DNA of 64,000 bases from the IMG/VR virus record IMGVR_UViG_3300002835_000007, positions 1 through 64,000 of that record. One strand, written 5' to 3'. The position numbers and the translations under genes were made by a program. Shown here one piece after another: positions 10,070 through 62,600 of this stretch (positions are counted from its first letter, which is position 1; every line of letters begins with the position of its first letter). Below the pieces are notes generated by a model. The model was not told where the DNA came from, made no database searches, and saw only the letters and a list, made by a program, of their open reading frames with translations.

Positions 10070-10283
10070 AAAAAGTTGCAAAATGTTTGGAGAATTAAAA
10101 TATTCTCCATACATTTGTAATATCAAATTAAATGTTTAACTAAAAAAAAAAGAAAATGTCAAAAACATCGAATCACGTAAAAATCTCTTGTTTGTTAGAG
10201 TGGATTAAATCTATTAAAAAATACAGATTTTAATCTTAGAAACAAAAATAAATTATTAAAGTAAAAAACGAAAAAAGAAAAAA

Positions 10284-12122: not shown

Positions 12123-12139
12123 ACTAACATTATTTAATT

Positions 12140-12170
12140 AAAGTCCCTAACTTTGTTAGGGATTTTTTTT
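12140..12170 (+). terminator. intrinsic terminator
   Basis: AAAGTCCCTAAC-TTT-GTTAGGGATTTTTTTT. Confidence 0.75.
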
Positions 12171-12190
12171 GAACTTTAAAAAATAAAAAT

Positions 12191-12961: not shown

Positions 12962-12964
12962 GAC

Positions 12965-13786: not shown

Positions 13787-14023
13787 CAATGATAAATTTT
13801 TTTGGTAAATTAGGTCTAATTGCACATGGTCAATTAAGATTGTTTAAAAATCTCTTCTATGAGATACAGTTGTTTGGTCGTATTAGAGATTTTAAAGATG
13901 GTATTACATTCTTTGAGTTTAAATGTAATTTAGACAGATATAAGAGTGAACATTCACCATCTTTTCAATTAGAATTAACAATATTAAACTTATATAATCA
14001 TATATGGGTTTATCAAAACAATT

Positions 14024-14350
14024 TTGAAGATGATAATAGTAAGTGATAGGTTTTTAAGGTTCTTGACATTCTTTTTAGGTGGTGGTCAATTACCAGCAGC
14101 TATGGCGTTCTACCCTTTTGTTATATTGAATAGCAAAGTGGTAGCAACGCCAGAGTTGATAAACCATGAAAGGATTCACCTAAGACAACAAATCGAAATG
14201 TTAATTATACCATTCTATATTTGGTATCTTATTGAGTATTATAGAAAGGGGTATTATAATGTTTCTTTTGAAAAAGAAGCGTATGCTAACGATAAAAACT
14301 TTAATTATCTTAAAAAAAGACGTATATTTAGTTTTATTAGATATTTATAA
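14024..14350 (+). CDS. HExxH-motif hypothetical protein
   Basis: LINHERIHLRQQ...FEKEAY. Confidence 0.7.
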   Translation: MKMIIVSDRFLRFLTFFLGGGQLPAAMAFYPFVILNSKVVATPELINHERIHLRQQIEMLIIPFYIWYLIEYYRKGYYNVSFEKEAYANDKNFNYLKKRRIFSFIRYL

Positions 14351-14468
14351 TAAAGACTTTGTTCATAAGAACAACTTTTAAGCAGAGTTAAGGTTGTTGT
14401 TTTTAATTAAAAAAAAATGGATAGTGAATGTAACAGTAAGCAGAAAAGTTGTGGGGACAGTTTGCCTC

Positions 14469-15272
14469 ATGATAGCGACTTTTCTGAACCCTTTAGGGTT
14501 CGACATACTGGTTTTCAAACTGATGCAGTTAACCAACGATTATTGGAATACAATGTACATTCTATATGGATTGGCATTTGTGTTCTTATTGCTGTCGCAC
14601 TTATTTTTTAGATTAAAAAAAAGAGTTTTAGGAAACTTATTTGTAACAATAGCATTATTTGTTAATCCATTGGGTTATGATGTTGTTGTTTACTGTATTA
14701 CGTTATTAACAAAAAATTATTGGATGACTATGGCGATTATGTATGCGTTAGCATTTGTTTTTTTTGGATTTTTTATGTACCTTTACAAAATGAATCCAAT
14801 CAAACTCATTAAAGACAAGATTATTGGGTTACATGAAAAATTTTTAAAAAAAAAAGTAAAAATGAAAACATTTGATGAACTATTTGACGAATTCTTTAAT
14901 AAAAAGAATTCTGAAGAACCAAAAAAGAAATCTAAACCTTCAAGAGAAGAATTTAGTGACGGATTATCTAAATTAATAAACATTTTATCTAGTGCTAAGC
15001 AAATAGATGATGAAGATGAAAAATTTAAAATAGACAATGAATATGGTGAACCATCTAGAGTTGAGTATTTCAATGAGGATGAATTGTATTTTAAAAAAAC
15101 AATATGGGAAGTTGAAGATGGTGAAATTGTTAAATTAGAAGTGTCAGATGCACCATTTGATGAAGACGAACACAAATCTTTAGAAGAATTATTAGAAGAA
15201 GCTATTGCTGCTGAAGAGTACGAAAAAGCTGCTGAAATAAGAGATGAATTAAATAAAATTAAAAATAATTAA
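14469..15272 (+). CDS. duplicated membrane domain in frame with a UVR-domain protein (possibly two genes; second ATG 14862)
   Basis: Two NPLG(F/Y)D...YW..M..Y.LAFVF repeats; C-terminal LEEAIAAEEYEKAAEIRDEL. Confidence 0.65.
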   Translation: MIATFLNPLGFDILVFKLMQLTNDYWNTMYILYGLAFVFLLLSHLFFRLKKRVLGNLFVTIALFVNPLGYDVVVYCITLLTKNYWMTMAIMYALAFVFFGFFMYLYKMNPIKLIKDKIIGLHEKFLKKKVKMKTFDELFDEFFNKKNSEEPKKKSKPSREEFSDGLSKLINILSSAKQIDDEDEKFKIDNEYGEPSRVEYFNEDELYFKKTIWEVEDGEIVKLEVSDAPFDEDEHKSLEELLEEAIAAEEYEKAAEIRDELNKIKNN

Positions 15273-15291
15273 AAAAAAAATTACAAAAAAC

Positions 15292-15322
15292 TTGACAAAT
15301 GTAAAAAAAGTTCGTACATTTG
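15292..15322 (+). promoter_or_regulatory. promoter upstream of leader peptide 2
   Basis: TTGACA-N17-TACATTTG. Confidence 0.75.
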
Positions 15323-15378
15323 TAGTATAATTTTGAATTTTAAAAAAAAACGATATATTTAATTAATACAAAAGCGAA

Positions 15379-15474
15379 ATGAAAACAACAGTTACTACAT
15401 ATCAACCGAAACAAACGCAAGGCGGAAAGCCTAGTGTATCGGGTATGTTATATCTGTTGAGTAACGAAGAATAA
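15379..15474 (+). CDS. attenuator leader peptide 2 (MKTTVTTYQPKQTQGGKPSVSGMLYLLSNEE)
   Basis: 31-codon ORF; K/T/Y/Q/P/G block; overlaps antiterminator strand ATCGGGT 15438-15444. Confidence 0.8.
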   Translation: MKTTVTTYQPKQTQGGKPSVSGMLYLLSNEE

Positions 15475-15498
15475 AGATTCTAAATTACAAGATATTCC

Positions 15499-15531
15499 AA
15501 ACCCGATTTCAGAAATGACATCGGGTTTTTT
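15499..15531 (+). terminator. intrinsic terminator of attenuator 2
   Basis: AAACCCGAT-T-TCA-GAAA-TGA-C-ATCGGGTTT then T-run. Confidence 0.85.
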
Positions 15532-15627
15532 GTTTTAGGTACCTATGCCTCTTAAAAAATAGGAACGTTATTTGACATGTTGGTTTATTTTGGGTTGTAC
15601 ATATACAATAGTAGGAATGTAAATTAT

Positions 15628-15701
15628 CGAGTAGTATAGGAGTGGTTTATCTAGCGGCATTTGGAATGCCGAGCACGTTGGTTCGAATCCAACCTATTCG
15701 A
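15628..15701 (+). tRNA. tRNA-Pro(TGG)
   Basis: CGAGTAG/CTATTCG; CGGCA-TTTGGAA-TGCCG. Confidence 0.92.
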
Positions 15702-15751
15702 CCCTAATGGTTTCCCATAAGCCATTAAAAAAACAAGTTATGGGAAGTTAT

Positions 15752-15825
15752 TTTCCGATAGACAAACTGGCAAAGTCACTCGCCTTTGAAGTGAGAATTT
15801 GGGGGTTCGAAGCCCTCTCGGAAAT
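15752..15825 (+). tRNA. tRNA-Gln(TTG)
   Basis: TTTCCGA/TCGGAAA; CTCGC-CTTTGAA-GTGAG. Confidence 0.9.
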
Positions 15826-15883
15826 CAAAAAAAATAAAAAAACTTGCATATGTTAAAAATAGTTCATACATTTGTAAAAGAAA

Positions 15884-15957
15884 AATAAAAGATAGCTTCA
15901 GCAATTTCACAACTATCAAACTTTTAATTTGAATCAGAAAATGCTATCTTGATTTAT
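15884..15957 (+). ncRNA. CAGCAA-stem RNA displaying a lone Lys(UUU) anticodon hairpin
   Basis: AAGATAGC(15889)/GCTATCTT(15943), TTCAGCAA, TCAAA-CTTTTAA-TTTGA 15916-15932; own promoter TACATTTG 15867. Confidence 0.7.
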
Positions 15958-16043
15958 TGGAGGGTGGCCGAGTGGTTAAAGGCGGCAGACTGTAAATCTG
16001 TTCTCGTAAGGGTACGGGGGTTCGAATCCCTCCCCTCCAACCA
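15958..16043 (+). tRNA. tRNA-Tyr(GTA)
   Basis: GCAGA-CTGTAAA-TCTGT; long variable arm; ACCA end. Confidence 0.96.
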
Positions 16044-16051
16044 AAAATTAT

Positions 16052-16124
16052 GCCTTTGTAGCACAGCTGGTAGTGCACTTCACTTGTAATGAAGGGGTCG
16101 TAGGTTCGAATCCTATCAAAGGCT
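16052..16124 (+). tRNA. tRNA-Thr(TGT)
   Basis: GCCTTTG/CAAAGGC; CTTCA-CTTGTAA-TGAAG. Confidence 0.96.
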
Positions 16125-16216
16125 CACGTGTTAACTAGGGTCGAGCCACATTTTGCCTCGGTTAACAATAGAAGAAAGAACCTAGAGGTGGCCGTGACTG
16201 TCTTTCTTCGAAATTT

Positions 16217-16289
16217 GCAGATATCGTATAATGGTTTATTATATTAGCCTTCCAAGCCTAGGATTTCAGTTCGATTCTGAATATCTGCT
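16217..16289 (+). tRNA. tRNA-Gly(TCC), imperfect anticodon stem
   Basis: GCAGATA/TATCTGC-T; loop CTTCCAA. Confidence 0.8.
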
Positions 16290-16348
16290 CAAAAAGAGGA
16301 ATAACAAGTGTGGATGCCTCAAGGTACAGCTGACCTACCACACTCTAT

Positions 16349-16420
16349 GCGAGAGTAGCTCAGTGGTAGAGCATCTGGTTACCAACCAGAGGGTCGTGGG
16401 TTCGAATCCCATCTCTCGCT
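16349..16420 (+). tRNA. tRNA-Gly(ACC)
   Basis: GCGAGAG/CTCTCGC-T Gly-type body; TCTGG-TTACCAA-CCAGA. Confidence 0.9.
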
Positions 16421-16428
16421 CAAAATAT

Positions 16429-16555
16429 GGGGGTGTTGAAATGTTAGATAAATCACATTCTGCCTTTTAGATTAAAGAATGTTTGCAGCAAAATCAAAAT
16501 TATTCACGCAAACTGTAAATTTGATAAAACGTTGGTGCAATTCCAGCCGCCCCCA
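16429..16555 (+). ncRNA. tRNA-like ends enclosing CAGCAA module and Tyr(GUA) anticodon hairpin
   Basis: GGGGGTG/CGCCCCC-A; ACATTCT/AGAATGT + TTGCAGCAA; CAAA-CTGTAAA-TTTG; GTTGG-TGCAATT-CCAGC. Confidence 0.7.
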
Positions 16556-16678
16556 CTAAAATAAAATTATAAAAAACTTAAAAAATAAAAACTATGAAAA
16601 ATTCTATCAACATTAAGCGAAAGATAAAACGATAAGGCACTCGGCCAAGCTGGTTACGAGTGTCAATGGAAAAAACAC

Positions 16679-16752
16679 GCCTTCGTAGCTCAGCTGGATA
16701 GAGCACTCCACTTTTAATGGAGGGGTCATGGGTTCGAGTCCCATCGGGGGTA
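16679..16752 (+). tRNA. tRNA-Lys(TTT)
   Basis: CTCCA-CTTTTAA-TGGAG; full cloverleaf. Confidence 0.94.
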
Positions 16753-16757
16753 CATAT

Positions 16758-16830
16758 GTACTCGTAGCTTAGTTGGTAGAGCACTCCGCTTTTAACGGAG
16801 GGGTCAAGAGTTCGAATCTCTTCGGGTACA
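16758..16830 (+). tRNA. tRNA-Lys(TTT)
   Basis: GTACTCG/CGGGTAC; CTCCG-CTTTTAA-CGGAG. Confidence 0.94.
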
Positions 16831-16861
16831 CAACTATTAATAAACCAACATGTAACGTATT

Positions 16862-37434: not shown

Positions 37435-37887
37435 ATGATTAAAACAATAGCAGCTGGTGTATTTATTATTAATAAAAATAATAAAGTATTGATTTGTCAC
37501 CCAACAAATCATAAACCAAATACATGGAGCATACCAAAAGGTAAGATTGAAGCATTAGAAACTTTTGCTGAAGCTTGTATAAGAGAAACTTTTGAAGAAA
37601 CAAACATAGATTTATCAGATTATAAAGATAAATTGATTATGTTGGATAGTGTGAACTATTCACATAAAAAGAAAATGTTAATTCCTTTTGTTTTATTTGA
37701 GAATGATTGTGAGTTATTAGATTTAACTATGGTAACTTTACAATGTAACTCAAATGTTCCAGAAGATAGAGGTGGATTTCCAGAAATGGATGGTTATGAT
37801 TGGGTTACAATTGATGAAGCAAGAAAACTATTACATCCAACACAAGTTGCATGTTTAGATAAGGTTAAACAATTATTTTCAAGATGA
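37435..37887 (+). CDS. Nudix hydrolase
   Basis: WSIPKG...ACIRETFEETN; FPEMD. Confidence 0.9.
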   Translation: MIKTIAAGVFIINKNNKVLICHPTNHKPNTWSIPKGKIEALETFAEACIRETFEETNIDLSDYKDKLIMLDSVNYSHKKKMLIPFVLFENDCELLDLTMVTLQCNSNVPEDRGGFPEMDGYDWVTIDEARKLLHPTQVACLDKVKQLFSR

Positions 37888-38102
37888 TGAGATTAGATTT
37901 ACATGGGGTTAAACACCACGAAGTTTCCAGAAAAGTAGATGAATTTATCTGGGAAACTATTCAGAAGAAGAAGACACAAGCTGTTATTATAACTGGCAAG
38001 TCTACACCAATGAAACAATTAGTTAAAGATTGTTTAAAAGATTATGACGCTAAATGTTTTGATTTGTTTGATGGTGGAAGTTTAGTTGTAGATTTATTTT
38101 AA
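37884..38102 (+). CDS. stand-alone Smr domain protein
   Basis: LDLHGV...IITGKS. Confidence 0.8.
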   Translation: MMRLDLHGVKHHEVSRKVDEFIWETIQKKKTQAVIITGKSTPMKQLVKDCLKDYDAKCFDLFDGGSLVVDLF

Positions 38103-38164
38103 AATAAATTTGCAAAATAGAAAAAAAGTTAGTACATTTGAGTATATAATTAAAAAGTAAATAA

Positions 38165-39406
38165 ATGAGTGATGTAAAAAAAGTATGGAATGAAGATGAT
38201 AGTAGATTATATCTTTCTTTTCCATCAAAAGAATTTGACCTATTAGATAATGGTGCTGTTTACAGTATTGGTATTGATGAAATGGGCCGTTTCTTCTTAA
38301 CGAAGAAAAGTGATGGTTATAAGTTTGATTACAAACTTTATGGTTTGGAAACAGATTTTGTTAACCGAGTTATTAAAACATACGGTAAAACACAAGGAAA
38401 CTTGGGTATTTTATTGAATGGTATCAAAGGTACTGGTAAAACAGTTAGTTCTAAATTGATTGCAACAAAAATCAATTTGCCAATTATCGTAGTTGATAGA
38501 AAAATAGATGGTGTTCATACTTTCTTAAACACTATCACACAAGACATCACAGTTTTTATTGATGAGTATGAAAAGATTTATGGTGAATCTTCTCAAATGT
38601 TAACCATTATGGATGGTGCGTTAAACTCAACATACAGACGTTTGTTTTTGTTAACTACCAACGAGTTATATGTTGATAGAAACATCATTGAACGTCCAAG
38701 TCGTGTACGTTATTTGAAAGTGTTTGGTAATCTTAAACCAGATGTAGTTGAAGAAATTGTTGATGATATTTTAGAATACACACAATTCAAAAAAGAATGC
38801 ATTTCATTTATTTCTAGTCTTGAAACAATTACAATTGATATTGTAAAAGCAGTATTGAATGAAGTAAACATCCATGAAGAAGCTCCGTCTGCATTTGAAA
38901 ACGTGTTCAACGTTAAGAAAATCAAAGGTAACTACAATGTTAACCTTGTTGAAGATGGAAGTTTAAGCAAATTGGCTAAAAACGTTAGAGTTTATCCAAA
39001 ACCAACTTATGCTGATAATTCAATCGGTTACCACTTTGAAATTGATGGTCAATCAATCGGTATGATTACTAGAATCATTAACTGGACAACTATCGAGGTG
39101 TCACCATACACTGATAGAAAAGGTAAACTAGTAGGTTTTGATGAACCAATTATCTTAAAAATTGAAGATGCTGATACTGTTAACTACGCATACAGCTATG
39201 GTTCATTTGATGAGTTTGGTATTCCAACAAATGCAGCAGCAGTATCTACAACAAAAGAAGTTTCACCAATTGCTAATAGAATTTTAAAAGCAATTGAAAA
39301 ATCTGATGAAGAAGAAGATGAATCAGACAATGATGTTGTTGAAATGAAAGTATCATCTATACCATTAGTTGATGATAGTTTTGAATCTAAAACAATATGT
39401 GAATAA
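38165..39406 (+). CDS. AAA+ ATPase
   Basis: GIKGTGKT, FIDEYEK, TTN, RPSR. Confidence 0.9.
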   Translation: MSDVKKVWNEDDSRLYLSFPSKEFDLLDNGAVYSIGIDEMGRFFLTKKSDGYKFDYKLYGLETDFVNRVIKTYGKTQGNLGILLNGIKGTGKTVSSKLIATKINLPIIVVDRKIDGVHTFLNTITQDITVFIDEYEKIYGESSQMLTIMDGALNSTYRRLFLLTTNELYVDRNIIERPSRVRYLKVFGNLKPDVVEEIVDDILEYTQFKKECISFISSLETITIDIVKAVLNEVNIHEEAPSAFENVFNVKKIKGNYNVNLVEDGSLSKLAKNVRVYPKPTYADNSIGYHFEIDGQSIGMITRIINWTTIEVSPYTDRKGKLVGFDEPIILKIEDADTVNYAYSYGSFDEFGIPTNAAAVSTTKEVSPIANRILKAIEKSDEEEDESDNDVVEMKVSSIPLVDDSFESKTICE

Positions 39407-39451
39407 AAAATAAATAAGGGGACAATTGTCCCCTTATAAATTTAAAATTAA

Positions 39452-39832
39452 ATGACTAATAAAGTTAAAATAAAATTAAAAGACATAGTTCAATCTAAAA
39501 AACAGATTCATTGGTCCAAAAAACAATTAAATATGATTGATGGGATTTCTGATAATTATGATGAGGATATAAGTTTAATATGGGTCACAAAATTTAACGA
39601 AATTATTGATGGACATCATAGATATGAAATATTGATTAATAAATTTGGTGGTGAACATGAGATAACGGTAAGACAATTTAATGTGTCAAAAAAAATATTT
39701 AAAACAATAGTTTATATTTTTTTACCATTATCTTTAATTATTTTATTACCTTTGTATTTAATTATTGAACGTTTTAAATTTAAAAAATGGCAAAGAAAAA
39801 AAGAGAACATAGAATTAATGATGAAATCATAG
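39452..39832 (+). CDS. ParB/Srx-like domain with C-terminal TM helix
   Basis: IIDGHHRY. Confidence 0.55.
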   Translation: MTNKVKIKLKDIVQSKKQIHWSKKQLNMIDGISDNYDEDISLIWVTKFNEIIDGHHRYEILINKFGGEHEITVRQFNVSKKIFKTIVYIFLPLSLIILLPLYLIIERFKFKKWQRKKENIELMMKS

Positions 39833-40284
39833 CAAGAACTGTAAGAGTTGATGGTGTTATTATGTCTATTCAAGAAGCATTACATAAAGCTGAACAATCT
39901 GAAATGGATTTGGTTTTAATTAATGATAATGCTGAACCTAAAATATGTCGCATATTAAACTATCAAAAGTTTTTATACGAACAAAAAAGAAAAGACAAAG
40001 AAAAGAGTAAATCACTTGAACTTAAAGAAATAAAGTTAGGACCAAACACATCTGAAAATGATTTATCTTATCGTTCTAAACACATTATTGAGTTTTTGGA
40101 TAAAGGACATAAAGTAAAACTTACTATGCAGTTCAGAGGTCGTGAAATGGCCTTTGTTTCCAAAGGTGAGTTGATTATGTTAAAATTGATTGATTCGATT
40201 TCAGAACATGGGTTGCCAGAAAGTATGCCAAAGATGGAGGGTAAAAGAATGCAATGTCTTCTAAAACCAAAAGTTAAGAAATAA
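39787..40284 (+). CDS. infC: translation initiation factor IF-3
   Basis: INDEI, DLVLI..A.P.ICRI.NY.KF.YE, KEIKL, GHKVK..FRGRE. Confidence 0.93.
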   Translation: MAKKKREHRINDEIIARTVRVDGVIMSIQEALHKAEQSEMDLVLINDNAEPKICRILNYQKFLYEQKRKDKEKSKSLELKEIKLGPNTSENDLSYRSKHIIEFLDKGHKVKLTMQFRGREMAFVSKGELIMLKLIDSISEHGLPESMPKMEGKRMQCLLKPKVKK

Positions 40285-40320
40285 CCTTGACACTTTAAGA
40301 AAAAATACTTATTGTTGTGT

Positions 40321-40959
40321 ATGATTTTATTTATACAACAATATTTGTCGGAATACTACTATATTAAAACCAGTGAAGTTGGTAATGATGGAATTTATTC
40401 CATTATTGATGAAAGACGTATTCCGATACCATTCAATGGTGGCAAACTCATAAAAGAGATTGTTACCATTTTTGGTTTAGAAGAAGATGTTTTAAAATCA
40501 TATATAGAAAGTTGGGCTGTTTCAATAAAACCAGATGTAGATTTGGAATTTTATTGGAAAACAACAGAAGACTTATTTGGTTTTCCAATTGCACACCAAA
40601 TAGCAGCAACCACTATTGCTATGGATTTGGTTGCAGTACAACCGATGGACGGACCAAGAGGTGAGTTATTATATATGGATTTCCAATATGGTGTTGACAC
40701 AGCAACTGGTGATTCACAAACAGTTACAGCAACAACTAGAAATGGTCGTGTTTATAATGAAGAAATATATAGACAGAGTTGGGGTGATATGGTAGCACAA
40801 TTATCTGAAAACCAACAAAATCATATATTTGGAGAATTAGACCACCCAACACCAGCTATAAACATAACTGTAAATGATAGAGATGATTCGATAGTGTATA
40901 GTGCATTAAATAAATGGAAAGATATTATTGGGATATCTAGTAGAAAATTTGGAGAATAG
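40321..40959 (+). CDS. chimeric protein: paralog N-domain + Gol-like capsid segment + prohead-protease-like segment
   Basis: IAMDLVAVQPMDGPRG; RNGRVY...GELDHP. Confidence 0.7.
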   Translation: MILFIQQYLSEYYYIKTSEVGNDGIYSIIDERRIPIPFNGGKLIKEIVTIFGLEEDVLKSYIESWAVSIKPDVDLEFYWKTTEDLFGFPIAHQIAATTIAMDLVAVQPMDGPRGELLYMDFQYGVDTATGDSQTVTATTRNGRVYNEEIYRQSWGDMVAQLSENQQNHIFGELDHPTPAINITVNDRDDSIVYSALNKWKDIIGISSRKFGE

Positions 40960-41323
40960 AAAAGTTTTGTGTACATTTGTAGATATTTACTAATATGAAC
41001 GTTATGAATATGTTTAAAAGTAGGAAAGGTAAGATAAAAAGTGTTTTAGAATATAAACTTGGTAATAAGTTAGATGATAATGATATCAATGACATATTAG
41101 AAGTTTTTGATGTGTATCAAAAAGATAATTTAGATAGCATTGATAAATTAAAGCGAGATAAAGTTTACGAAACAAAAAGAATTAGTGGTGCATTGAAACA
41201 AACAATCAATGCTCATGGACCAATTACTAAACAATTCATTGGTTCAGCAACCAAAAGGGTTTATGGGTCATTGTTAAACAACGAAAAGAAAGAAAGTTTT
41301 ATAATAAGATTATGGAAAAAGAT

Positions 41324-41842
41324 ATGGAAAAAACAAAAATAGCAATATTTGATTTTGATGGGACATTGGTTAACACACCGATGCCAGATGAAGGTAAAGA
41401 TTTATACAAAGAAAAGACTGGCAAAGAATGGCCGCATAAAGGTTGGTGGTCTAAACCAGAATCATTAGACTTAGATGTTTTTGAAATGCCTACAGTTGAT
41501 GATGTAATTGTTGATTACGTATTAGAAGCAGCAACAAAAGATACAATCATTGTTATGTTGACTGGTCGTATGCAAAACTTATCAGATAGTGTTAAAAAAA
41601 TATTAGATGCACATGGTCTTATGTTTCACGAATACCATTTCAACAGAGGTGGCAGCACTGAATATGCTAAAATGAATACTATGGATGATTTACTTAATAA
41701 ATACCCATCAGTTAGAGAAATAAAAATGTGGGATGATAGAGATGAACACATTCCAATCTTCAAAGAATGGGGAGATAAAAAAGTATCATCTGGTAGATTA
41801 GACAAGTTTAAAATTAAACATGTTATTCAAAATAGACATTGA
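41324..41842 (+). CDS. HAD-family protein (RNA repair-like)
   Basis: FDFDGTLVNTP, GWWS, LTGR, WDDR. Confidence 0.8.
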   Translation: MEKTKIAIFDFDGTLVNTPMPDEGKDLYKEKTGKEWPHKGWWSKPESLDLDVFEMPTVDDVIVDYVLEAATKDTIIVMLTGRMQNLSDSVKKILDAHGLMFHEYHFNRGGSTEYAKMNTMDDLLNKYPSVREIKMWDDRDEHIPIFKEWGDKKVSSGRLDKFKIKHVIQNRH

Positions 41843-41929
41843 AAATGAACCCACTAAGAAATTAGTGGGTTTTTTATTTGTAATTTAAGAATATTATACA
41901 TACATTTGTAATAATTAATAATAAGAGTT

Positions 41930-42487
41930 ATGTTAAAAGAAAATTTTAAAAATAAGTTAATAGAAAGTTTCAATGATAATCAACATGATAATTTAAACGT
42001 TGGTGGGTTAATTTCATTTATGGAAAATTCAGATGTTAATTATTATATGGCTGATTTGAATGGCCCTATGGGTATGGCAACTATTAATGGTGTTTATATA
42101 GATATTAACAATATATTATCTAAATTTGGGTTCCCAATTGGAACAAACACTATGCTGCTTTATTTTATCATACTACACGAGACAGCTCATATGAAAAGAA
42201 TAATTAAATTAGGTAAGGATAAAGTGTTAGAGAAATTATCATTAACAGACTTTAATGATTTTTTTGAACATATTATTAATGAAGAATTAATTGCTGATAA
42301 TTATGGTTGTTTAATTTATTATCTTTTAAACAAAAAGAAATATCCTTCTTATTACACACAGAATTTAGGTGACGCAAAAAATAAAGAAAGATACAAACAA
42401 ACTGCCAGAGGTTTTTACGGGCAAATACAAAATGATGAGACAAAATATAACAAACTTGTCAATAGATTTATAAAAAAAATATATTAA
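41930..42487 (+). CDS. HExxH metallopeptidase-like protein
   Basis: ILHETAH...EELIAD. Confidence 0.6.
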   Translation: MLKENFKNKLIESFNDNQHDNLNVGGLISFMENSDVNYYMADLNGPMGMATINGVYIDINNILSKFGFPIGTNTMLLYFIILHETAHMKRIIKLGKDKVLEKLSLTDFNDFFEHIINEELIADNYGCLIYYLLNKKKYPSYYTQNLGDAKNKERYKQTARGFYGQIQNDETKYNKLVNRFIKKIY

Positions 42488-44473
42488 ATGATTAAAATAA
42501 ATGATATAATAGAAGGGAAGTTAAGTATGAACGCAAGTGGTTCTGCTTATTTGGTGAGTGAGAATATACCAAAAGATATTTACATACACAAATCTAAAAC
42601 AAACAAAGCGTTACATTTAGATAAAGTTAAAATAGAGGTAATCCATGGACAAGGACGTTCTATAGAAGGTAAAGTAATTGAAATTGTAGAACGATTTAGA
42701 ACAGAATTTGTAGGTACAATACAAATAAGTGAGAAGTTCGCTTTCTTTGTACCAGATTCAAATAAAATAATAATTGATTTCTTTATACCTTTGAATAAAT
42801 TAAATGGTGCTATACATGGTCAAAAGGTTGTTGCAGCATTGACTGAATGGAAAGAAGACGCTAAGAACCCTAATGGTAAAATAGTTAGAGTTATTGGTAA
42901 TTCTGGTGAACACGAAACGGAAATACATTCAATCTTAGAAGAATACGGATTACCTTATGATTTCCCAGATGATGTAATAGCAGAGTCTGAAGCAATATCA
43001 GAAGAAATACTACAATCTGAAATAGAGAAACGTATAGATATGCGTGATGTGTTGACATTTACCATTGACCCACATGATGCAAAAGATTTTGATGATGCGT
43101 TGAGTGTTAGATGGGTTGATGGAGTATTGGAAGTTGGTGTTCATATCGCTGATGTGGCACACTACATGCGACCAGAAACTGAATTGGATAGAGAAGCGTT
43201 TGCTAGAGGAACTAGTGTTTACCTAGTGGATAGATGCGTGCCAATGATACCAGAGAAGCTTTCTAACGGACTTTGTTCACTAAGACCACACGAAGATAAG
43301 CTTTGCTTTTCAGTGGTGTTTAAAATCGACCAAAATGGACGTGTGATGGATGAGTGGTTTGGTAGAACAGTAATACATTCTGACCATAGATTTACATATG
43401 AAGAAGCACAATCGATAATTGAGGTAGGTAAACTACCTAAAGATGCTATCGCTGAAGGTGAAACCTTAATATTTGAAAAATCTGGGTTAGGTTCTGTTGT
43501 TGGATGGGATAAAGCAACCAATTTAGGTAATGCTATATTGGTGTTGGATAAATACGCTAAGAAAATGCGTAAGGTAAGATTTAGCAAAGGTTCTATTTCA
43601 TTTGACAAACATGAAGTTAGGTTCAAGTTAGATGAAAACAACAAACCAATTGATATTATATTCAAGATTGGTAAGGATTCCAACAAATTGATTGAAGAAT
43701 ACATGTTATTGGCTAACAGACATGTTGCTCAGTTTATTAATCAAAAAGGTTTACCAATGGTTAACAGAGCTCATGATAAGCCAGATGAAGCTAAATTAGA
43801 AAGTCTTAAAGATTTCATTCATCAATTTGGTTATGAGATTAAAGTTGACACACCAGAAGAAACAACTAAATCTTTGAATAAGTTGCTGCGTGATGTAAGA
43901 GGTACTAGTGAAGAAGAAATGATTACTAATCTTGTAGTTAGAACAATGCAGAAAGCTGATTATAGAACAAAGAATATTGGTCACTATGGTTTAGGTTTCA
44001 AACATTATGCTCACTTTACAAGTCCAATCAGACGTTATCCAGATGTTATTGTACATAGATTGTTAGCGTTGTATTTAGATGATACTAGAAAGACTAACCC
44101 TAACATTGCTAAATTAGATGGTAAGTGTACACATTTATCTGAAAGAGAGAAGAAAGCACAAAAAGCTGAACGTGATAGCATTAAGTTCATGCAATGTGTT
44201 TATATGTCAGATAAGGTAGGTAAAGTTTACAAAGGTATGGTAACTAGTGTTGCTGAATTTGGGTTGTTTATTACTATCGAAGAGAATGGTTGTGATGGGT
44301 TAGTTAAATTATCTGACATAATGGGTGACACATTTGTTGCGGATACTGAAAATTACCGAGTTAAAGGTACTAAAACTGGTGCTTATTTACGTTTGGGGGA
44401 TGAAGTTCATGTAGTCGTAACGTCTGTTGATATTGAAAAAAAGAACATTAATTTATCATTAATTAACCTATAG
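42488..44473 (+). CDS. rnr: ribonuclease R
   Basis: TIDPHDAKDFDDA, RGTSVYL, IEEYMLLAN, HFTSPIRRYPD, C-terminal S1. Confidence 0.95.
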   Translation: MIKINDIIEGKLSMNASGSAYLVSENIPKDIYIHKSKTNKALHLDKVKIEVIHGQGRSIEGKVIEIVERFRTEFVGTIQISEKFAFFVPDSNKIIIDFFIPLNKLNGAIHGQKVVAALTEWKEDAKNPNGKIVRVIGNSGEHETEIHSILEEYGLPYDFPDDVIAESEAISEEILQSEIEKRIDMRDVLTFTIDPHDAKDFDDALSVRWVDGVLEVGVHIADVAHYMRPETELDREAFARGTSVYLVDRCVPMIPEKLSNGLCSLRPHEDKLCFSVVFKIDQNGRVMDEWFGRTVIHSDHRFTYEEAQSIIEVGKLPKDAIAEGETLIFEKSGLGSVVGWDKATNLGNAILVLDKYAKKMRKVRFSKGSISFDKHEVRFKLDENNKPIDIIFKIGKDSNKLIEEYMLLANRHVAQFINQKGLPMVNRAHDKPDEAKLESLKDFIHQFGYEIKVDTPEETTKSLNKLLRDVRGTSEEEMITNLVVRTMQKADYRTKNIGHYGLGFKHYAHFTSPIRRYPDVIVHRLLALYLDDTRKTNPNIAKLDGKCTHLSEREKKAQKAERDSIKFMQCVYMSDKVGKVYKGMVTSVAEFGLFITIEENGCDGLVKLSDIMGDTFVADTENYRVKGTKTGAYLRLGDEVHVVVTSVDIEKKNINLSLINL

Positions 44474-44511
44474 ACTTTATTTTTTAAGTTTTATTTAGTA
44501 TATTAGGGATT

Positions 44512-45315
44512 ATGAATGATGTTATATTTATTAATCAATATTTAGATAAAAACTATACTGTTATTACTGGCAACCTTGATTATTTAATCAAGGATACTAT
44601 AGATGATAAATCTATGGGGTTTTTAGATTTTAAAAAAGTTTTTATAAAAATATTTGGTGATTTTAAGTCAAGTGAAGAATCATCAACATCTATTATCATT
44701 TTAAATTCATGGTTTAATAATAAAAAAAGAATTTTAAATAAAAAACTATTTGATTTATTTGATGAAGTTGATGATGGTAGTCTGAAAAGTCTTTTCCTAT
44801 TAAATAAAATAAAAACTGTTTGTGATTCAGATTATAAATATGAATTTCACCATGATTTTATCACAAATGTGTTTATTGAATATTATAAAGATAAATACAT
44901 GTTGCATAAATTAGAGAATTATGTTAAGACATTCAATACTGATTTTGGAAGTGTTAAAATGATGAACGATTTTCAAGATGATTTTATTTTAGAACATGAA
45001 AAAATAATATCATTCGCAAAAGAATATCTAAATAATTGGTATAGTGAAACTGTTATTGGTAGTAAAGTTAAAGATTTACTATCACAATTAGTATTGACAC
45101 TAGGTTCTAGAAACTGGGTAGTGACTTGGATTGGTCATGGACCATTCAGCAAAAAAAGATTATTAGAAAAATTCATAAACGAAAGTACATATCATCATGA
45201 TTACATATTAAATATGTATGACAAATGGTATGGAGATGCAGTTATTGACGCATCTGAAAGAGTCATGGGAAGAAATCTAGGTATCTTTTCAAGTGGCAGA
45301 ATAACATTACAATAA
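44512..45315 (+). CDS. hypothetical protein (paralog family with 40321 and 53718)
   Basis: FINQYLDKNY...KIFG. Confidence 0.65.
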   Translation: MNDVIFINQYLDKNYTVITGNLDYLIKDTIDDKSMGFLDFKKVFIKIFGDFKSSEESSTSIIILNSWFNNKKRILNKKLFDLFDEVDDGSLKSLFLLNKIKTVCDSDYKYEFHHDFITNVFIEYYKDKYMLHKLENYVKTFNTDFGSVKMMNDFQDDFILEHEKIISFAKEYLNNWYSETVIGSKVKDLLSQLVLTLGSRNWVVTWIGHGPFSKKRLLEKFINESTYHHDYILNMYDKWYGDAVIDASERVMGRNLGIFSSGRITLQ

Positions 45316-52857: not shown

Positions 52858-53718
52858 ATGAAACAAATTAAAATCGTAACAACAATTGCTAACATTGATG
52901 AAAATTCACTTAAATTTTATTTAAGAGATATCTATCAAGCAAAACCATTCACAGTTGAAGAAGAATATGAATGTGCGTTAAGAGCACATAATGGTGATGA
53001 AAACGCTAGAGCTGAATTAATTTACCGAAACCTAAGATTTGTTGTTACAGTTGCTAAACAATATTTAACTACAAATTTACATCTTGCTGATTTAATAAAT
53101 GAGGGTAACATTGGATTGATATTGGCTGCCGATAGATTCCAACCAGAAAGAAATCTAAAGTTTATCTCTTATGCTGTTTGGTGGGTTAGAAAACTTATCG
53201 TTGAGTATATTGGTAAGAACGGTAAAATGATTAGATTACCATTCAACAAAGTTCAATCAATGATTAAACTTAATAAAGTTTTATCTGAATTAGAACAAAA
53301 GAATGGTTACCATGTTAACGAATATGAAGCAGCAATCGAAACTAATGATGAATCATTTAAATTGTTAGGTGAAATCAATTCAGTTAGAATGTTATCAATG
53401 GATAATCCATTGAGTGATGATGGTGATGGTTTAACGTTACATGAACTAATTAATGACCCAACAGCACAAACAACAGATTATTTAACAGTTAACTCTGATT
53501 TTAAAAGAGAAGTTAGAGAAAGTTTAAATATACTTAAACCTAATGAGAAAATAATAATTGAAGCTTTATTTGGTTTAGATGGTGGTGAACCTAAAACCTT
53601 AAAAGAGGTTAGTGAAATTGTTTTATTAACAAGAGAAAGAGTTAGACAAATCAAAGAGAAATGTTTAATAAAACTCAGAGATAACAAAAAAATAATGGCA
53701 GCATATACTGATATTTAA
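52858..53718 (+). CDS. RpoD/SigA-family sigma factor (Bacteroidota-like)
   Basis: NLRFVVTVAKQY, DLINEGNIGL, KFISYAVWW, TRERVRQIKEK. Confidence 0.93.
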   Translation: MKQIKIVTTIANIDENSLKFYLRDIYQAKPFTVEEEYECALRAHNGDENARAELIYRNLRFVVTVAKQYLTTNLHLADLINEGNIGLILAADRFQPERNLKFISYAVWWVRKLIVEYIGKNGKMIRLPFNKVQSMIKLNKVLSELEQKNGYHVNEYEAAIETNDESFKLLGEINSVRMLSMDNPLSDDGDGLTLHELINDPTAQTTDYLTVNSDFKREVRESLNILKPNEKIIIEALFGLDGGEPKTLKEVSEIVLLTRERVRQIKEKCLIKLRDNKKIMAAYTDI

Positions 53719-54094
53719 TGAAACAAATTGTTTTAAAATACTTAAATGAAAATTATCTTATGACCCTTTCAACTTATGTTTCTTATAAGTTGAAGGACAA
53801 ACATAAGAACGAAGATGTTTCATTAAAAGAGGTTTTAATTCAAATAGAAACCATTTTCGCATTAAATGAAGAAGAGCAGCGAATAATATTTGATGAATGG
53901 GCTGATTCAAAATCAGTTGAGTTAAATAACATCATTGTTGAAATTCAAGAAAAAATATACAGATTAACTGGTAAAGAAATATCTATTAACCCATCAGAAA
54001 TGAATGGGTTAATAGATACACCAGATAATTTGGATAATTTCATTAGAAATTATATAGTTTTATAGTTTTTGTAATATTTATAATAAAAAGAACT

Positions 54095-59693: not shown

Positions 59694-62600
59694 ATGAAAA
59701 AATATCTAATTAGTTCGTTTGTTTGGTACCTTATTTTATCTTTTGGTATGTTTGTAATCTGGTTGTTAACTGGTATAACTGGTCTTATTTTAATCAGAGT
59801 TATTGTGTCATTGATACTAGGTTATTTTAAACCAATACAAAATTTAAATTTACCTTTTAAATAAAATGGAAAAATATAGAATTATATCAGAGAATCCTAG
59901 TGATGTAACAAAAACTGAATGGTTCATTCAACGCAAAAAGTTTTGGGGTTGGAGAACTATTGAAGTAAATGAAAACAATAGGTCAACAGAATTATCTTTT
60001 GGTTCATTGGGTGAAGCTGAATTCTATATGTATAAAAATTATTTCAGAGATGGGTGGGTTTATCAACCAACACCTAACGAATATCGGTATGAACGTAACA
60101 CTTATTATGGTTATTAATTATGAAGACATTAAACGTAAACGGTAGAGAATTTCAATATGAAGTTGAAACTTATATGGGGGAGTTTGGTACTTTCGAAGAA
60201 ACTGTATTTTATGAGGGTTTTAAAACTTATAGTAGAAAGAGATATTTTTTATTTGGTGATATGATAACCATATCAAAACCAATATGGGTTTTTACTATCC
60301 ATTGTAATATTGAAAGTGAAGGATATACTAAATCTGAAATCAAAGAAAAAATAGATAGACAGATACAATTGTTGGAACGTAAAAAACAAATAGAAAATGG
60401 AGAAATCATTTAACTTTGAAACACTGGAAGAACGTTATTTAAAACAAATGGCTAACTCCATTACAGTTTCAGTGGAAGACTTAACAGACAACGAAAGAAC
60501 TCTTATAAGAGAATCTTTTGATTTGTTTGAAGCAAAATTGGAAGAGATTAAAACGCTGCAAGATGATGTTAAACGTTTGTCAATTGATTTAGCTAACATC
60601 AAAGTGATGCATGAGGATGCTTATAAACCTAGACATAAAGATGATTATGATGATAGTACATTTGATTCACACGACTTAGATTATAAATAATATGGAAAAT
60701 TTTAAAGAAGAAAATTTTTTTGAAAGAATATCTAATTCATTTAAAAAGAAATTAGTATTAAAAATAGGTCAATTAGGTGTTTATCACGATAAGTTAGCGT
60801 TTTACACTGAGAACGATGGGTCTGATGTCATTAAGCATAATATTTATGTAAAGATAAAGATTGTGGAGGTATACGACCAACTGGTTGAAATTGAAGTATT
60901 GGATTTTACTATATCAGATTCAGCTAGTCAAGACATAATAAACTTAGTTAAAAACAACATGCCTAAATATGTTAATCCAAGAATAGTTAGGTGGCAAAAA
61001 TTAGATTAATATGGTAGCAATTGGCATTATAACATTGATTGGTTTCTCATTGGTAGCATGGTGGATTATTGATGGTGAACGTAAACTTAGAAAAAATGAT
61101 TAACTGGGAACATTATGAATTCAATGATGAACAAGAAGTTCAGATTATTGATGGAGATAAAACTTTTACATTGAAAGTTAAACTAATCGAATATGAATGG
61201 TCGCTGCACAGAGAACCTTATCTTGCAGACTTAAAGGTTATTGATACTACCAATGAAGAAGAATATCCATTAGAAAGCATAATGCGTTTGCCAATAGAAA
61301 CAAAAGATTATGTTAATTTCTTATTGTTTGCACCAACTGATAAAGCACCTGGACGTGAGTTAAAAAGAAAAGGTAACATTACATTGTTAAACTTATGATT
61401 AAACAAGAAGCAACTTACTATGATAACTATAACATTAAAACATCTTCAGAATATAATGAAGGTGTTTTAGTTGCTTATGCAAAATACAACGAGAAAGGTA
61501 ATGTAATCTTAAATAATGTTATTGATGAATACGAAGAAAGATTTGAGTATGATAAGAAAAATAGATTGGTAAGATGGTCTTGTATTTATTCTACAAAAGA
61601 AAATTCATGGAAAACATTTTCTTATTCAAAAGATAAAATGACAATTCTACATAGAAGGATAGGAAACCCACCAGTTATACATAAAATGGTATTTGGACCA
61701 GAAGAAAACGGTATGCGAGATATGATTTCTGAAAAATTTCTATAATTTTATTTGGTGGATTAAAAAAGAATTTGTACATTTGTTAAAAATAAAACAATAT
61801 GAAAAAGGTTTCAATTAAAACTGGTATGTTAGCCACAGATTTAGGTTATCGTGACTCTAATGATATGTGGTTGTTTAAAACAGAAAAGGGTAGTTTGTAT
61901 GGTACTAACACTAGAGGTGGTATCAGTGGCAAAGAAAAGACATTCAAACAACCTACTCAAACTGAATTACAATCATGGTTAAGAAAGAAAGGTATCGATG
62001 TATATGCTATCCCAACAACTTATGAAGGTGATAAGACATATGCAGCAGTGTTGCATACTGGAGATAAAATGGAGTATGTTAAGACTGGTGTTAAATCATA
62101 TGAAAAAGCAATTGAGTTAGGTTTGAAGGACGCATTACTAATCTTAAAACAAAAGAAAAATGGATAATAGTAGAAGAATAGTATTTGTTGTGATTTTTAT
62201 AGTGGCAGTACTCACGTTACTTGGTATTGTTAGTAAATCACATAGACAGAATAATATTGTAATCAGAACAGCAACACAAGAATTTATTGTTAATGATTAT
62301 TATCAAGATGAAAATTGTATTGAGTTTAATTATGATGGTGAATTGAGAACCATTTGTGGTGACTACGAAATAATAGAATGAGTAGGTGTGATGAATGGAA
62401 TGGGACATATGGTCACATTGCTAATTACCTTATAGACAAAAAAGGTATGCCAGATAGAAAAGCATTTGCTGCCGCTAAAACATTGGTGTATAAATACACT
62501 GATTCAGTTAAGTTCAAAGGTTCTTTCAGCGACAGAGTTATGTATGTCAGAAAGAATTATAGTAGTTTTATGAATTATTTAAATAATAATTTGGTTGTTT

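What the first reader, a model, noticed from the sequence alone, without database searches (positions are those of the whole stretch)
40321..40959. Chimeric protein carrying a Gol-like major-capsid segment and a prohead-protease fragment
Seen in sequence: FPIAHQIAATTIAMDLVAVQPMDGPRGELLYMDFQY (40576-40689) and RNGRVY...GELDHP (40738-40848) occur in one 212-aa ORF, next to infC and far from any structural module. Established knowledge: the T4 gp23 Gol region (…RRAIPNLIAFDICGVQPMNSPTG) binds EF-Tu and triggers Lit protease, and NGR.Y...GELDHP is the conserved N-terminal part of gp21-type prohead proteases. Inference: a concatenated decoy of conserved virion-assembly epitopes that host sensors recognise, or an EF-Tu or assembly modulator.
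Basis: partly seen in the sequence, partly recalled or inferred. Interest (0 to 1): 0.75.

Follow-up and report, generated by a model that had tools for sequence, protein, structure and literature searches.

The report
Small phage protein displaying head-protein fragments
A huge freshwater phage encodes a small, conserved protein with a folded front domain and a floppy tail stitched together from the most conserved bits of its capsid protein and capsid-maturation protease; it belongs to a large, apparently undescribed family that probably works by mimicking unassembled head proteins.

Summary
Window 40321-40959 (+) is an intact 212-aa ORF just downstream of a phage IF3 gene and about 100 kb from the real head genes. 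Residues ~88-142 match the gp23 capsid family above Pfam's own cutoff and align on the T4 Gol region. Residues ~138-180 match the prohead protease, through its catalytic-His motif. It is neither unique nor decaying: 95 homologue clusters exist, and dN/dS is about 0.06-0.3 for the capsid block and 0.1-0.35 for the protease block. New here: the first ~84 residues form a confidently folded acidic domain that defines a virus-only superfamily of at least 245 clusters. Their tails are modular, sometimes non-collinear strings of four conserved capsid-protein blocks (propeptide, Gol/N-arm, spine helix, C-terminal strands). Some tails also carry protease motifs, and one carries a tail-tube piece. The window ORF's tail is predicted disordered. 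The gene has its own conserved sigma70-type promoter ending 5 nt before the ATG. Its Gol-like block evolves far faster than the same block in the phage's own capsid protein. Best reading (confidence 0.35): an independently promoted (probably early) molecular mimic that competes for a partner of nascent head proteins, most likely a host sensor. Function is untested.

The parts
40287..40315 (+). sigma70-type promoter-like element (TTGACA, 17 nt, TATTGT) ending 5 nt before the ATG; implies a leaderless or near-leaderless mRNA
   Evidence: Consensus scan, 10 of 12 matches. Both hexamers and their spacing are conserved in 11 of 12 homologous loci while the spacer diverges. Only 5 such promoter+start+ORF arrangements occur in the 206-kb record, against 0.2 in shuffles. 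The start site itself is inferred.
40321..40959 (+). The ORF (family 1 of the N-domain superfamily), 212 aa plus stop
   Evidence: RNA-library contigs lie inside it, which is weak evidence of transcription.
40321..40572 (+). N-domain, residues 1-84: folded, acidic (net charge -7), helix/beta-hairpin/three helices; weak winged-helix-like fold matches
   Evidence: AF2 pLDDT ~86-93. VIA Z<=5.0 to winged-helix domains. Profile finds 245 clusters. hhalign to family 2 gives probability 88.7%, E 2.6e-6. Charge.
40582..40746 (+). MCP block A, residues ~88-142: homologue of the gp23 N-arm/E-loop base, i.e. the T4 Gol region (DLVxVQPM..P.G.L core)
   Evidence: Pfam Gp23 above cutoff. PHROG 138. BLASTP to own MCP residues 75-132. 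Alignment with RB32 gp23. dN/dS 0.06-0.3. AF2 pLDDT <50.
40732..40860 (+). Prohead-protease block, residues ~138-180: NGRVY strand, a helix, and the GELDHP motif that holds the catalytic His in real S77 proteases. The middle part (SW...AQLSENQ, residues 153-165) may instead be a collapsed MCP-propeptide block.
   Evidence: PHROG 207 E 1.9e-4. BLASTP to own protease residues 64-108, E 4e-5. dN/dS 0.1-0.35 in most pairs with dS>=0.3. The exact LYENQ of the own MCP propeptide occurs in 25 of 96 family members.
40924..40956 (+). C-terminal IIGISSRKFGE: tentative remnant of the protease catalytic-Ser motif (GVSSRG in the real protease)
   Evidence: Motif comparison only. BLAST does not align it. 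Found at the C-terminus of many members whatever the rest of the tail.
39787..40284 (+). Phage IF3 gene, constant upstream neighbour
   Evidence: Pfam IF3_N and IF3_C. The IF3 then family 1 order is conserved in all five genomes checked and on metagenome contigs.
40995..41342 (+). n115, a 115-aa gene of unknown function; constant downstream partner of family-1 genes, including the remodelled orthologue P0247
   Evidence: No family, structure or atlas match.
41312..41842 (+). HAD_SAK_1 (RNA-repair type HAD) gene, part of the conserved block
   Evidence: Pfam. Synteny.
53718..54065 (+). Family 3 paralogue: N-domain plus a short tail of its own; its start overlaps the stop of the sigma70-family gene 52858-53718
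   Evidence: N-domain profile E 1.4e-7. The sigma then family 3 order is conserved in all five genomes, with 1-3 tandem copies. Sigma gene from Pfam and PHROG.
44512..45315 (+). Weak candidate N-domain protein (267 aa) directly after the RNase R gene
   Evidence: N-domain profile E 3e-3 and 0.038. Not confirmed.

Best explanation
The ORF is a two-part mimic. A small, folded, acidic N-terminal domain, probably a protein-interaction module, carries an intrinsically disordered tail. The tail is an ordered string of short conserved motifs copied from head-morphogenesis proteins: the Gol/N-arm block of the gp23-type capsid protein, then the strands holding the protease's NGRVY and catalytic-His motifs and possibly the catalytic-Ser motif. 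It cannot be a capsid subunit or a protease. I propose it is made from its own promoter, independently of the late head genes and probably earlier. I propose it works by competition: the displayed motifs occupy a partner that would otherwise engage nascent or unassembled capsid protein and protease. The most likely partner is a host surveillance factor that reads linear motifs of phage structural proteins, such as Lit acting through EF-Tu, chaperone-type sensors, or CapRel, Thoeris or CBASS-type sensors. Shown: composition, conservation, purifying selection, modular family architecture, conserved promoter, predicted disorder. Inferred: early expression, competition, and the identity of the partner.
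For: (1) The tail is built from the head proteins and nothing else. Among all ORFs of the genome, only the MCP and the protease resemble superfamily tails. Curated profiles agree: Gp23 in 66 of 142 representatives, protease in 6, tail tube in 1. (2) The blocks used (propeptide, A, B, C) coincide with 6 of the 7 most conserved 30-aa windows of the MCP. They occur in shuffled orders and combinations, as expected if each block is a separately useful binding motif. (3) Block A is the Gol region, a known 29-residue trigger that binds EF-Tu and is called the most conserved part of gp23 (PMC3014915). MCPs, vertex proteins and the prohead protease are documented triggers or escape loci of defences (PMC13728456). 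Sensors that read linear motifs co-translationally exist, and so does a phage competitor of a structural-protein sensor, DSAD1. (4) Both blocks are under purifying selection, yet block A changes at 13-24 of 36 positions between genomes whose real MCP block A differs at 0-2 of 36. It matches its own MCP at only 12-17 of 36. So it is not tied to the frozen capsid lattice; it keeps a generic motif while evolving fast. (5) It has its own conserved sigma70-type promoter. It sits among translation, RNA-repair and NUDIX genes, not head genes. (6) The tail is predicted disordered, which suits motif display.
Against: No partner is identified and the host is unknown; no defence system was or could be tested. 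A copy of a trigger motif might activate a sensor and so harm the phage. The sister family 2 folds confidently (pLDDT 86). In one lineage a translationally coupled gene pair keeps all four MCP blocks together. That looks more like a split mini-capsid-protein with a structural role than like loose bait. The protease block is present only in a subclade, so it is not essential to the family. Promoter timing is inferred from sequence only, and the RNA evidence is thin. The N-domain has no informative fold match.
Confidence: 0.35

Rival explanations
1. It is an assembly-linked factor. The tail blocks dock on the phage's own unassembled MCP, scaffold or protease, so that the protein acts as a holdase, an assembly timer, or a pseudo-substrate/pseudo-enzyme brake on the prohead protease. 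Families 1 and 2 may pair to form a split mini-MCP (P-domain plus N-arm plus propeptide).
For: Blocks A, B, C and the propeptide are the parts of a gp23-type MCP that make inter-subunit and scaffold contacts (T4 review PMC9958956). Family 2 folds. A tandem, overlapping gene pair keeps all four blocks, and P0247 and P0252 join A, C and the propeptide in one chain. Giant phages are known to keep non-catalytic protease paralogues (SPN3US gp117).
Against: The gene is not in or near the head module. It has its own sigma70-type promoter. Block A diverges strongly while the proposed partner, the own MCP, is almost invariant. The protease motifs retained are buried catalytic-core strands, not surface contacts. 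One member carries a tail-tube piece instead.
Confidence: 0.22
2. It is a translation modulator. The Gol-like block binds host EF-Tu, as T4 gp23 does, and the protein works with the adjacent phage IF3 and the tRNA/RNA-repair gene set to retune or protect translation. That could include shielding EF-Tu from a Lit-type protease.
For: Block A aligns on the Gol region and keeps its VQPM..P.G core, while the phage's own MCP has VQAM. Gol binds EF-Tu domains II and III and was proposed to do so in all T4-related phages. Adjacency to IF3 is conserved in all genomes checked. The window also holds 19 tRNA genes, RNase R and an RNA-repair HAD.
Against: It does not explain the protease motifs, or the sister families that carry spine-helix, C-terminal, propeptide or tail-tube blocks on the same N-domain. 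The residues critical for Gol activity could not be checked here. In the P0247 lineage IF3 is not the upstream neighbour.
Confidence: 0.15
3. It is a weapon against rival phages. The fragments co-fold with or cap the nascent capsid protein and protease of co-infecting gp23-type phages and poison their assembly. The resident phage is spared because its own blocks have diverged.
For: Block A resembles MCPs of other huge-phage lineages (57% and 59% identity to LR756501 and LR756500 over 44 and 37 aa; compare LR745206) more than its own MCP (29% over 66 aa; 13 of 36). It has an independent, probably early, promoter.
Against: Other members carry blocks about 75% identical by eye to this clade's MCP type (block B, compared with the MCP). 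There is no evidence of co-infection dynamics, and dominant-negative action by such short pieces is unproven.
Confidence: 0.08
4. The tail is evolutionary debris. Only the N-domain is functional, and the tail consists of pieces of head genes captured by illegitimate recombination and carried along.
For: Tails are very variable, with whole blocks gained or lost and unrelated tails in some subclades. 64 of 258 members have no recognisable block. Patchy dS near 0 shows recombination inside the gene.
Against: dN/dS of block A (0.06-0.3) is lower than that of the N-domain (mostly 0.26-0.55). Block A persists in about two thirds of members down to ~30% N-domain identity. The same four MCP blocks recur with the same boundaries in different arrangements. 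Frames are intact everywhere.
Confidence: 0.08

Closest known systems
Gol region of T4 gp23 (trigger of the e14 Lit protease through EF-Tu)
   Same: Block A of the ORF is the sequence homologue of this 29-residue region and keeps the D..V(Q)PM..P.G core. Like Gol it would be available as a linear, unfolded peptide.
   Different: Here the block is cut out of the capsid protein, fused to an unrelated folded domain, given its own promoter, and encoded ~100 kb from the head genes. EF-Tu binding and Lit activation are untested.
T4 gp21-type prohead protease (Peptidase S77) and non-catalytic paralogues such as SPN3US gp117
   Same: It shares the NGRVY strand and the GELDHP motif that carries the catalytic His, and perhaps the Ser motif. 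Giant phages do keep degenerate protease paralogues.
   Different: Only ~45-75 residues of a ~200-residue fold are present. There is no segment for the catalytic Asp, it is predicted disordered, and Pfam S77 does not detect it. It is a set of motifs, not a pseudo-enzyme domain.
DSAD1 of SPbeta-like phages (competitor of the tail-tube trigger for the DSR2 sensor)
   Same: It works like the proposed mechanism: a small phage protein occupies the site of a sensor that would otherwise bind a structural protein.
   Different: DSAD1 is not reported to be built from pieces of the trigger. The present family is made of trigger-protein fragments, is modular, and has no demonstrated sensor.
Small T4 prohead-core proteins and protease regulator (gp67, gp68, Inh)
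   Same: They are small proteins that act with gp23, gp22 and gp21 during head assembly. From my own recollection, unverified here, old T4 literature noted short similarities of core proteins to gp23 and an inhibitor of gp21 (Inh).
   Different: The T4 core genes 67 and 68 lie in the head-gene cluster (my own recollection, not checked here), and their products are packaged and cleaved. No N-domain homologue was found in cultured phages. No sequence relation was detected.

Membership tests
Gp23-type major capsid protein (PF07068, HK97 fold) | Sequence match to the family profile above the curated cutoff | tested here: met
   29.5 bits against cutoff 24.4, E 6.6e-7, but only profile positions 10-61 of 376.
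Gp23-type major capsid protein (PF07068, HK97 fold) | Complete HK97 fold (A domain, P domain, E loop) able to form capsomers | tested here: not met
   Only ~55 residues match. The region is predicted disordered (pLDDT <50). The real 608-aa MCP lies elsewhere. It is not a capsid protein.
Gol peptide (Lit/EF-Tu trigger) | Homology to the 29-residue Gol region of gp23 with its conserved core | tested here: met
   Aligns on RB32 gp23 residues ~96-125. D110, V114, P116, P120 and G122 are invariant or nearly so across the ten aligned rows, and the window ORF reads VQPM. Gol definition from PMC3014915.
Gol peptide (Lit/EF-Tu trigger) | Binds EF-Tu domains II and III and licenses Lit cleavage | not testable with these tools
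   Needs binding and cleavage assays. The 13 critical residues from scanning mutagenesis were not available to compare.
Peptidase S77 (T4 gp21 prohead protease) | Profile match to the protease family | tested here: inconclusive
   PHROG 207 E 1.9e-4 and BLASTP to own protease E 4e-5. Pfam S77 finds only the real protease in the genome at E<=1.
Peptidase S77 (T4 gp21 prohead protease) | Catalytic triad His-Ser-Asp within the herpesvirus-protease-like fold | tested here: not met
   The His motif GELDHP is present. The Ser motif is only tentative (GISSRK against GVSSRG). The protein ends 5 residues later, so there is no Asp segment. The region is predicted disordered. Triad from PMC5694885.
N-domain superfamily (defined here) | N-terminal ~70-85-residue domain with the YL..Y...(G)...L..E....F........W (.DL.FYW) signature, followed by a variable tail | tested here: met
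   The ORF is a founding member. The profile finds 245 clusters, always N-terminal, and 3-4 paralogues per genome. hhalign to family 2 gives 88.7%, E 2.6e-6.
Phage anti-defence competitor or decoy (DSAD1-like in mode of action) | Binds a host sensor at the trigger site and prevents activation | not testable with these tools
   No sensor or host is known. PADLOC gives no hit for the ORF itself, as expected for a phage protein.

The most novel reading that the evidence does not exclude
Huge phages carry a dedicated 'epitope-string' system. It is a family of small proteins in which one carrier domain displays shuffled, selected copies of the invariant peptide blocks of virion proteins (four capsid blocks, protease catalytic strands, tail tube). 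The proteins would be made ahead of the real structural proteins to blind or pre-occupy the host factors that recognise those blocks. In effect this is a viral counter-measure aimed at the very motifs that bacterial immunity uses as phage signatures.
Probability: 0.3. Interest if true: 0.9.

Novelty: categorically new. Interest (0 to 1): 0.78.

Why it matters
Bacterial immune systems are increasingly found to recognise conserved phage structural proteins such as capsid, protease and tail tube. How phages cope when they cannot mutate those invariant parts is an open question. This family shows that a widespread group of uncultured huge phages keeps, under selection, separate small genes whose products consist of exactly those invariant parts attached to a common carrier domain. 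If they are decoys or competitors, they would be a new class of counter-defence. They would also be a ready-made map of which peptide blocks matter to sensors. If instead they are assembly factors, they would be a new principle for controlling very large capsids: fragment-based, in-trans pieces of the capsid protein. Either way the superfamily (at least 245 clusters, no Pfam family of its own and named only 'hypothetical protein' in the sources searched) gives testable constructs. It also explains many puzzling short 'Gp23' hits in metagenomes.

Tried and rejected
- Recent duplication or gene conversion from the phage's own head genes: rejected. Identity to the own MCP is 29% over 66 aa and to the own protease 35% over 48 aa, and the block does not track the own MCP.
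- The one tblastn hit covering both segments (LR745206.1) as evidence of a conserved fusion in cultured or INPHARED phages: rejected. It is that phage's real 560-aa MCP. The N-domain is absent from the phage collection and from ~185,000 prokaryote genomes.
- An active mini-protease: rejected, because the triad is incomplete and no fold is predicted.
- Frameshifted or truncated C-termini hiding protease pieces in short homologues: not seen. Downstream frames show only the next gene.
- N-domain identification: Foldseek against PDB and AFDB gave nothing. VIA gave only weak winged-helix-like matches, Z<=5.9. The PDB sequence profile gave nothing. The atlas returned only its own kind. An acidic pI ~5 argues against DNA binding.
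- Family 2 model against capsid structures: no capsid match found, so the 'mini P-domain' idea is unverified.
- Neighbours (n115, the 185-aa gene, family 2 neighbours): no Pfam or PADLOC assignment. My guess that a family-2 neighbour is a 2H phosphoesterase rests on motifs only.
- Donor search for family-3 tails: no donor found.
- RNA evidence: only a few short contigs and no 5' ends.
- A genome-contig scan with the N-domain alignment failed for lack of a conserved stretch; it was repeated with A1.

Full report
WHAT IS THERE. Window 40321-40959 (+) is an intact ORF of 212 codons. The window is the first 64 kb of a 205,931-bp IMG/VR record, estimated 58% complete, so it comes from a huge phage of roughly 350 kb. 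The window also holds 19 tRNA genes, IF3, RNase R, a NUDIX protein, an RNA-repair type HAD and a sigma70-family factor. The phage's real head genes lie about 100 kb away: an S77 protease of 240 aa, an acidic scaffold-like protein, and a 608-aa gp23-type MCP. That MCP is about 31-33% identical to T4-like capsid proteins over its C-terminal part. The same DNA is found nearly unchanged in at least 18 lake and freshwater metagenomes from 2016 to 2024.

Residues 89-142 match Pfam Gp23 above the curated cutoff (29.5 against 24.4 bits, E 6.6e-7, profile positions 10-61 of 376). They also match PHROG 138 major head protein (8.3e-7). Residues 138-180 match PHROG 207 head maturation protease (1.9e-4). 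They align with the phage's own protease across the NGRVY strand and the GELDHP motif (17 of 48 identical, E 4e-5). Pfam S77 itself does not detect the ORF, so the protease part is the weaker call. Aligned with a T4-type gp23 (RB32), the capsid segment falls exactly on the Gol region; D110, V114, P116, P120 and G122 are invariant or nearly so across the aligned rows, and the window ORF also keeps the VQPM core. A T4 review describes Gol as a 29-residue stretch that binds EF-Tu domains II and III. It calls Gol the most conserved part of gp23, proposed to contact EF-Tu in all T4-related phages (PMC3014915).

NOT UNIQUE, NOT DECAYING. A length-restricted search found 95 homologous clusters of 127-225 aa at 36-95% identity. 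Sixteen loci were found in IMG/VR. The gene always sits in the same block: IF3, this gene, a ~110-aa gene (n115), HAD_SAK_1, a ~180-aa gene, RNase R. Among seven close genes, Nei-Gojobori dN/dS is 0.06-0.3 for the capsid block. It is 0.1-0.35 for the protease block in most pairs with dS at least 0.3, mostly 0.26-0.55 for the N-terminal domain, and 0.36-0.55 (noisy) for the last 30 residues. Blocks of dS near 0 beside blocks of dS 0.5-0.8 in the same pair show recombination inside the gene.

ANATOMY. AlphaFold2 with 49 sequences gives a confident N-terminal domain: residues 1-83 at pLDDT about 90, with a helix, a beta-hairpin and three helices. The tail, residues 84-212, scores below 50 almost throughout. 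The family alignment shows three things. The N-domain is the constant part, with W65, L75 and W79 invariant. The capsid block is kept in nearly all members. The protease-like part is present only in the window's subclade, and other subclades have unrelated tails. Within the subclade the tail reads as an ordered string of short motifs: VQPM, NGRVY, (R/K)xSW, LYENQ, GELDHP, SSRK. Individual motifs are present or absent in different members. The stretch between NGRVY and GELDHP may be a collapsed copy of the MCP propeptide and not a protease helix. The exact LYENQ of the phage's own MCP propeptide occurs in 25 of 96 members, and the alignment places it under the propeptide block of other members. 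This assignment is ambiguous. The C-terminal IGISSRK resembles the protease Ser motif GVSSRG, but that rests on a 6-residue match only. The T4-type triad is His-Ser-Asp (PMC5694885), and no Asp segment can exist here. The ORF is therefore neither a capsid protein nor a protease.

Searching related genomes for Gp23 pieces revealed a second small-ORF family of 187-225 aa. Its N-terminal ~65 residues are homologous to the N-domain (hhalign probability 88.7%, E 2.6e-6). Its remainder matches two separate MCP stretches. One is the spine-helix region (MCP 374-426, 43% identity, E 8e-12). The other is the C-terminal strands (MCP 557-589, 42%, E 5e-6). The ~130 residues between them in the MCP are missing. 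A profile of the N-domain alone finds 3-4 paralogues per genome. These include a third family that lies directly downstream of the sigma70-family gene in all five genomes, abutting or overlapping it in three; in the window this is 53718-54065. In a library of 1.84 billion representatives the profile finds 245 clusters, always with the domain at the N-terminus of a 68-250-aa protein. No member occurs in the INPHARED phage collection or in ~185,000 prokaryote genomes.

I mapped all 258 sequences in hand on the phage's MCP and protease. The architectures were:
- N + block A: 127 members.
- N + A + protease: 39.
- N + spine helix, with or without the C-terminal block: 19.
- Members with the propeptide block: 7.
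- No recognised block: 64, many of them very short.

Some orders are not collinear with the MCP. P0247 and P0252 are N + A + C-terminal block + propeptide. P0247 occupies the same genomic slot as the window ORF, followed by the n115-like gene and HAD. Overlapping its start upstream is a 139-aa gene that is N-domain + spine-helix block. That coupled pair therefore displays all four MCP blocks, and the same pair is seen in L061. Among all ORFs of the genome only the MCP and the protease resemble any tail. Curated profiles add one tail-tube tail (PHROG 4542, 9e-12) and one DUF285 tail. The four MCP blocks coincide with 6 of the 7 most conserved 30-residue windows of the MCP, in a crude three-sequence measure that partly reflects detection bias.

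EXPRESSION SIGNAL. A TTGACA, 17 nt, TATTGT element ends 5 nt before the ATG. Both hexamers and their spacing are kept in 11 of 12 loci, including distant ones, while the spacer between them diverges. Only five such promoter-start-ORF arrangements exist in the record, against 0.2 expected. I infer a dedicated sigma70-type promoter and a leaderless or near-leaderless mRNA; neither is shown directly. Metatranscriptome contigs of 151 nt lie inside the ORF, one without mismatch. The tool warns that DNA carry-over is possible, and no 5' ends were obtained.

WHAT THE BLOCK DOES NOT DO. In four genomes whose MCPs are 80-86% identical, MCP block A is identical at 34-36 of 36 positions. Block A of the small protein is identical at only 12-23 of 36 between genomes, and matches its own MCP at 12-17 of 36. 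It keeps the canonical VQPM core where the phage's MCP has VQAM. It therefore does not co-vary with, or closely copy, the resident capsid protein. It preserves a generic family motif while evolving about as fast as the N-domain (42-60% identity).

INTERPRETATION. The shown facts point to mimicry by display: disorder, motif-string organisation, selection on the motifs, modular reuse of conserved virion-protein blocks on one carrier domain, independent promoter, and non-structural neighbourhood. The open question is the partner.

I favour a host factor that reads linear motifs of nascent structural proteins (0.35), for four reasons. Block A is a known trigger epitope. Capsid, vertex and protease proteins are documented triggers or escape loci (PMC13728456). 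Co-translational motif sensing and competitive blocking of a structural-protein sensor both have precedents. And the fast evolution against a frozen MCP fits a variable outside partner. The main objection is that a trigger copy could itself trigger.

The chief rival (0.22) is an assembly role. It is supported by the confidently folded family 2, by the coupled pair that keeps all four MCP blocks, and by the fact that these blocks are the N-arm, P-domain and scaffold-binding parts (PMC9958956). An EF-Tu/translation role (0.15) fits the IF3 neighbourhood but not the other blocks. Interference with rival phages (0.08) and debris (0.08) are less likely, for the reasons given in their entries.

The N-domain's fold gives no functional lead. 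Matches are winged-helix-like only at Z<=5.9, and the domain is acidic.

NOVELTY. The family has no Pfam model of its own. No PHROG with a function covers it, and it carries no name beyond 'hypothetical protein' in the sources searched. My literature searches found no description of small phage proteins assembled from fragments of capsid and protease genes. Those searches cover open-access text only. I rate the architecture as categorically new, with the function unproven.

Noticed in passing
window 52858-54065: A sigma70-family gene (regions 1.2, 2 and 4) is followed, with overlapping stop and start, by an N-domain paralogue (family 3). The pair is conserved in all five genomes, with 1-3 tandem copies of the small gene. 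This could be a sigma partner or anti-sigma.
   Followed up: partly
window 40287-40323: The conserved promoter leaves no room for a leader or Shine-Dalgarno sequence, so the mRNA would be leaderless. It lies directly after a phage IF3 gene. From my own knowledge, IF3 discriminates against leaderless mRNAs in E. coli. Only four other genes in the record share this arrangement (start codons at 157038, 152212, 148818 and 112621, minus strand).
   Followed up: partly
window 569-16831: There are nineteen tRNA genes in three clusters. One, at 7442-7520, is called with a four-base anticodon (ttta), which could be a frameshift-suppressor-like tRNA or a miscall.
   Followed up: no
window 37435-45315: This is a conserved non-structural block: NUDIX, AAA ATPase, a 126-aa gene, IF3, the ORF, n115, HAD_SAK_1 (RNA-repair type), a 185-aa protein with an HExxH-like HETAH motif (weak PADLOC PDC-M63A hit, 1.6e-3), RNase R, and a 267-aa weak N-domain candidate.
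   Followed up: partly
window 41847-41872: An 11-pair hairpin with T-runs on both strands lies right after the HAD gene. It is a likely bidirectional terminator that closes the IF3-to-HAD transcription unit.
   Followed up: no
L034 537-2329; L033 253-2311; L025 556-2977: Family 2 is flanked in three genomes by a 173-182-aa gene with two H-x-S motifs (GxHISF and GLHMSxGY) and by a 236-329-aa gene. The first is reminiscent of 2H phosphoesterases, the fold of anti-CBASS Acb1. Pfam and PADLOC give no hit.
   Followed up: partly
L005 1531-5419 (LR745206.1): In this 635-kb phage the prohead protease is fused to a long repeat-rich scaffold (707 aa, repeated YSEY(L/I)AEN(L/V)DKNI units) directly upstream of the MCP.
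   Followed up: no
G000 113290-113529 (-), 114626-114961 (+); window 61395-61745: These are further weak N-domain candidates (E 1e-3 to 2e-2 with a mixed profile). The superfamily may have more paralogues per genome than the 3-4 counted.
   Followed up: no
P0177, P0203, P0230, P0244 (metagenome proteins): These N-domain proteins have tails that look like a DUF285 repeat (4.9e-7), a YadA-head-like repeat (0.01), a tail-fibre-like GIGT motif, and the C-terminal half of a gp19 tail-tube protein (PHROG 4542, 9e-12). P0244 is known only from a 937-bp contig.
   Followed up: partly
L053 2035-2964: In the closest relative (92% identical ORF) a 309-aa gene is inserted between IF3 and the ORF, so the IF3 adjacency is not absolute.
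   Followed up: no
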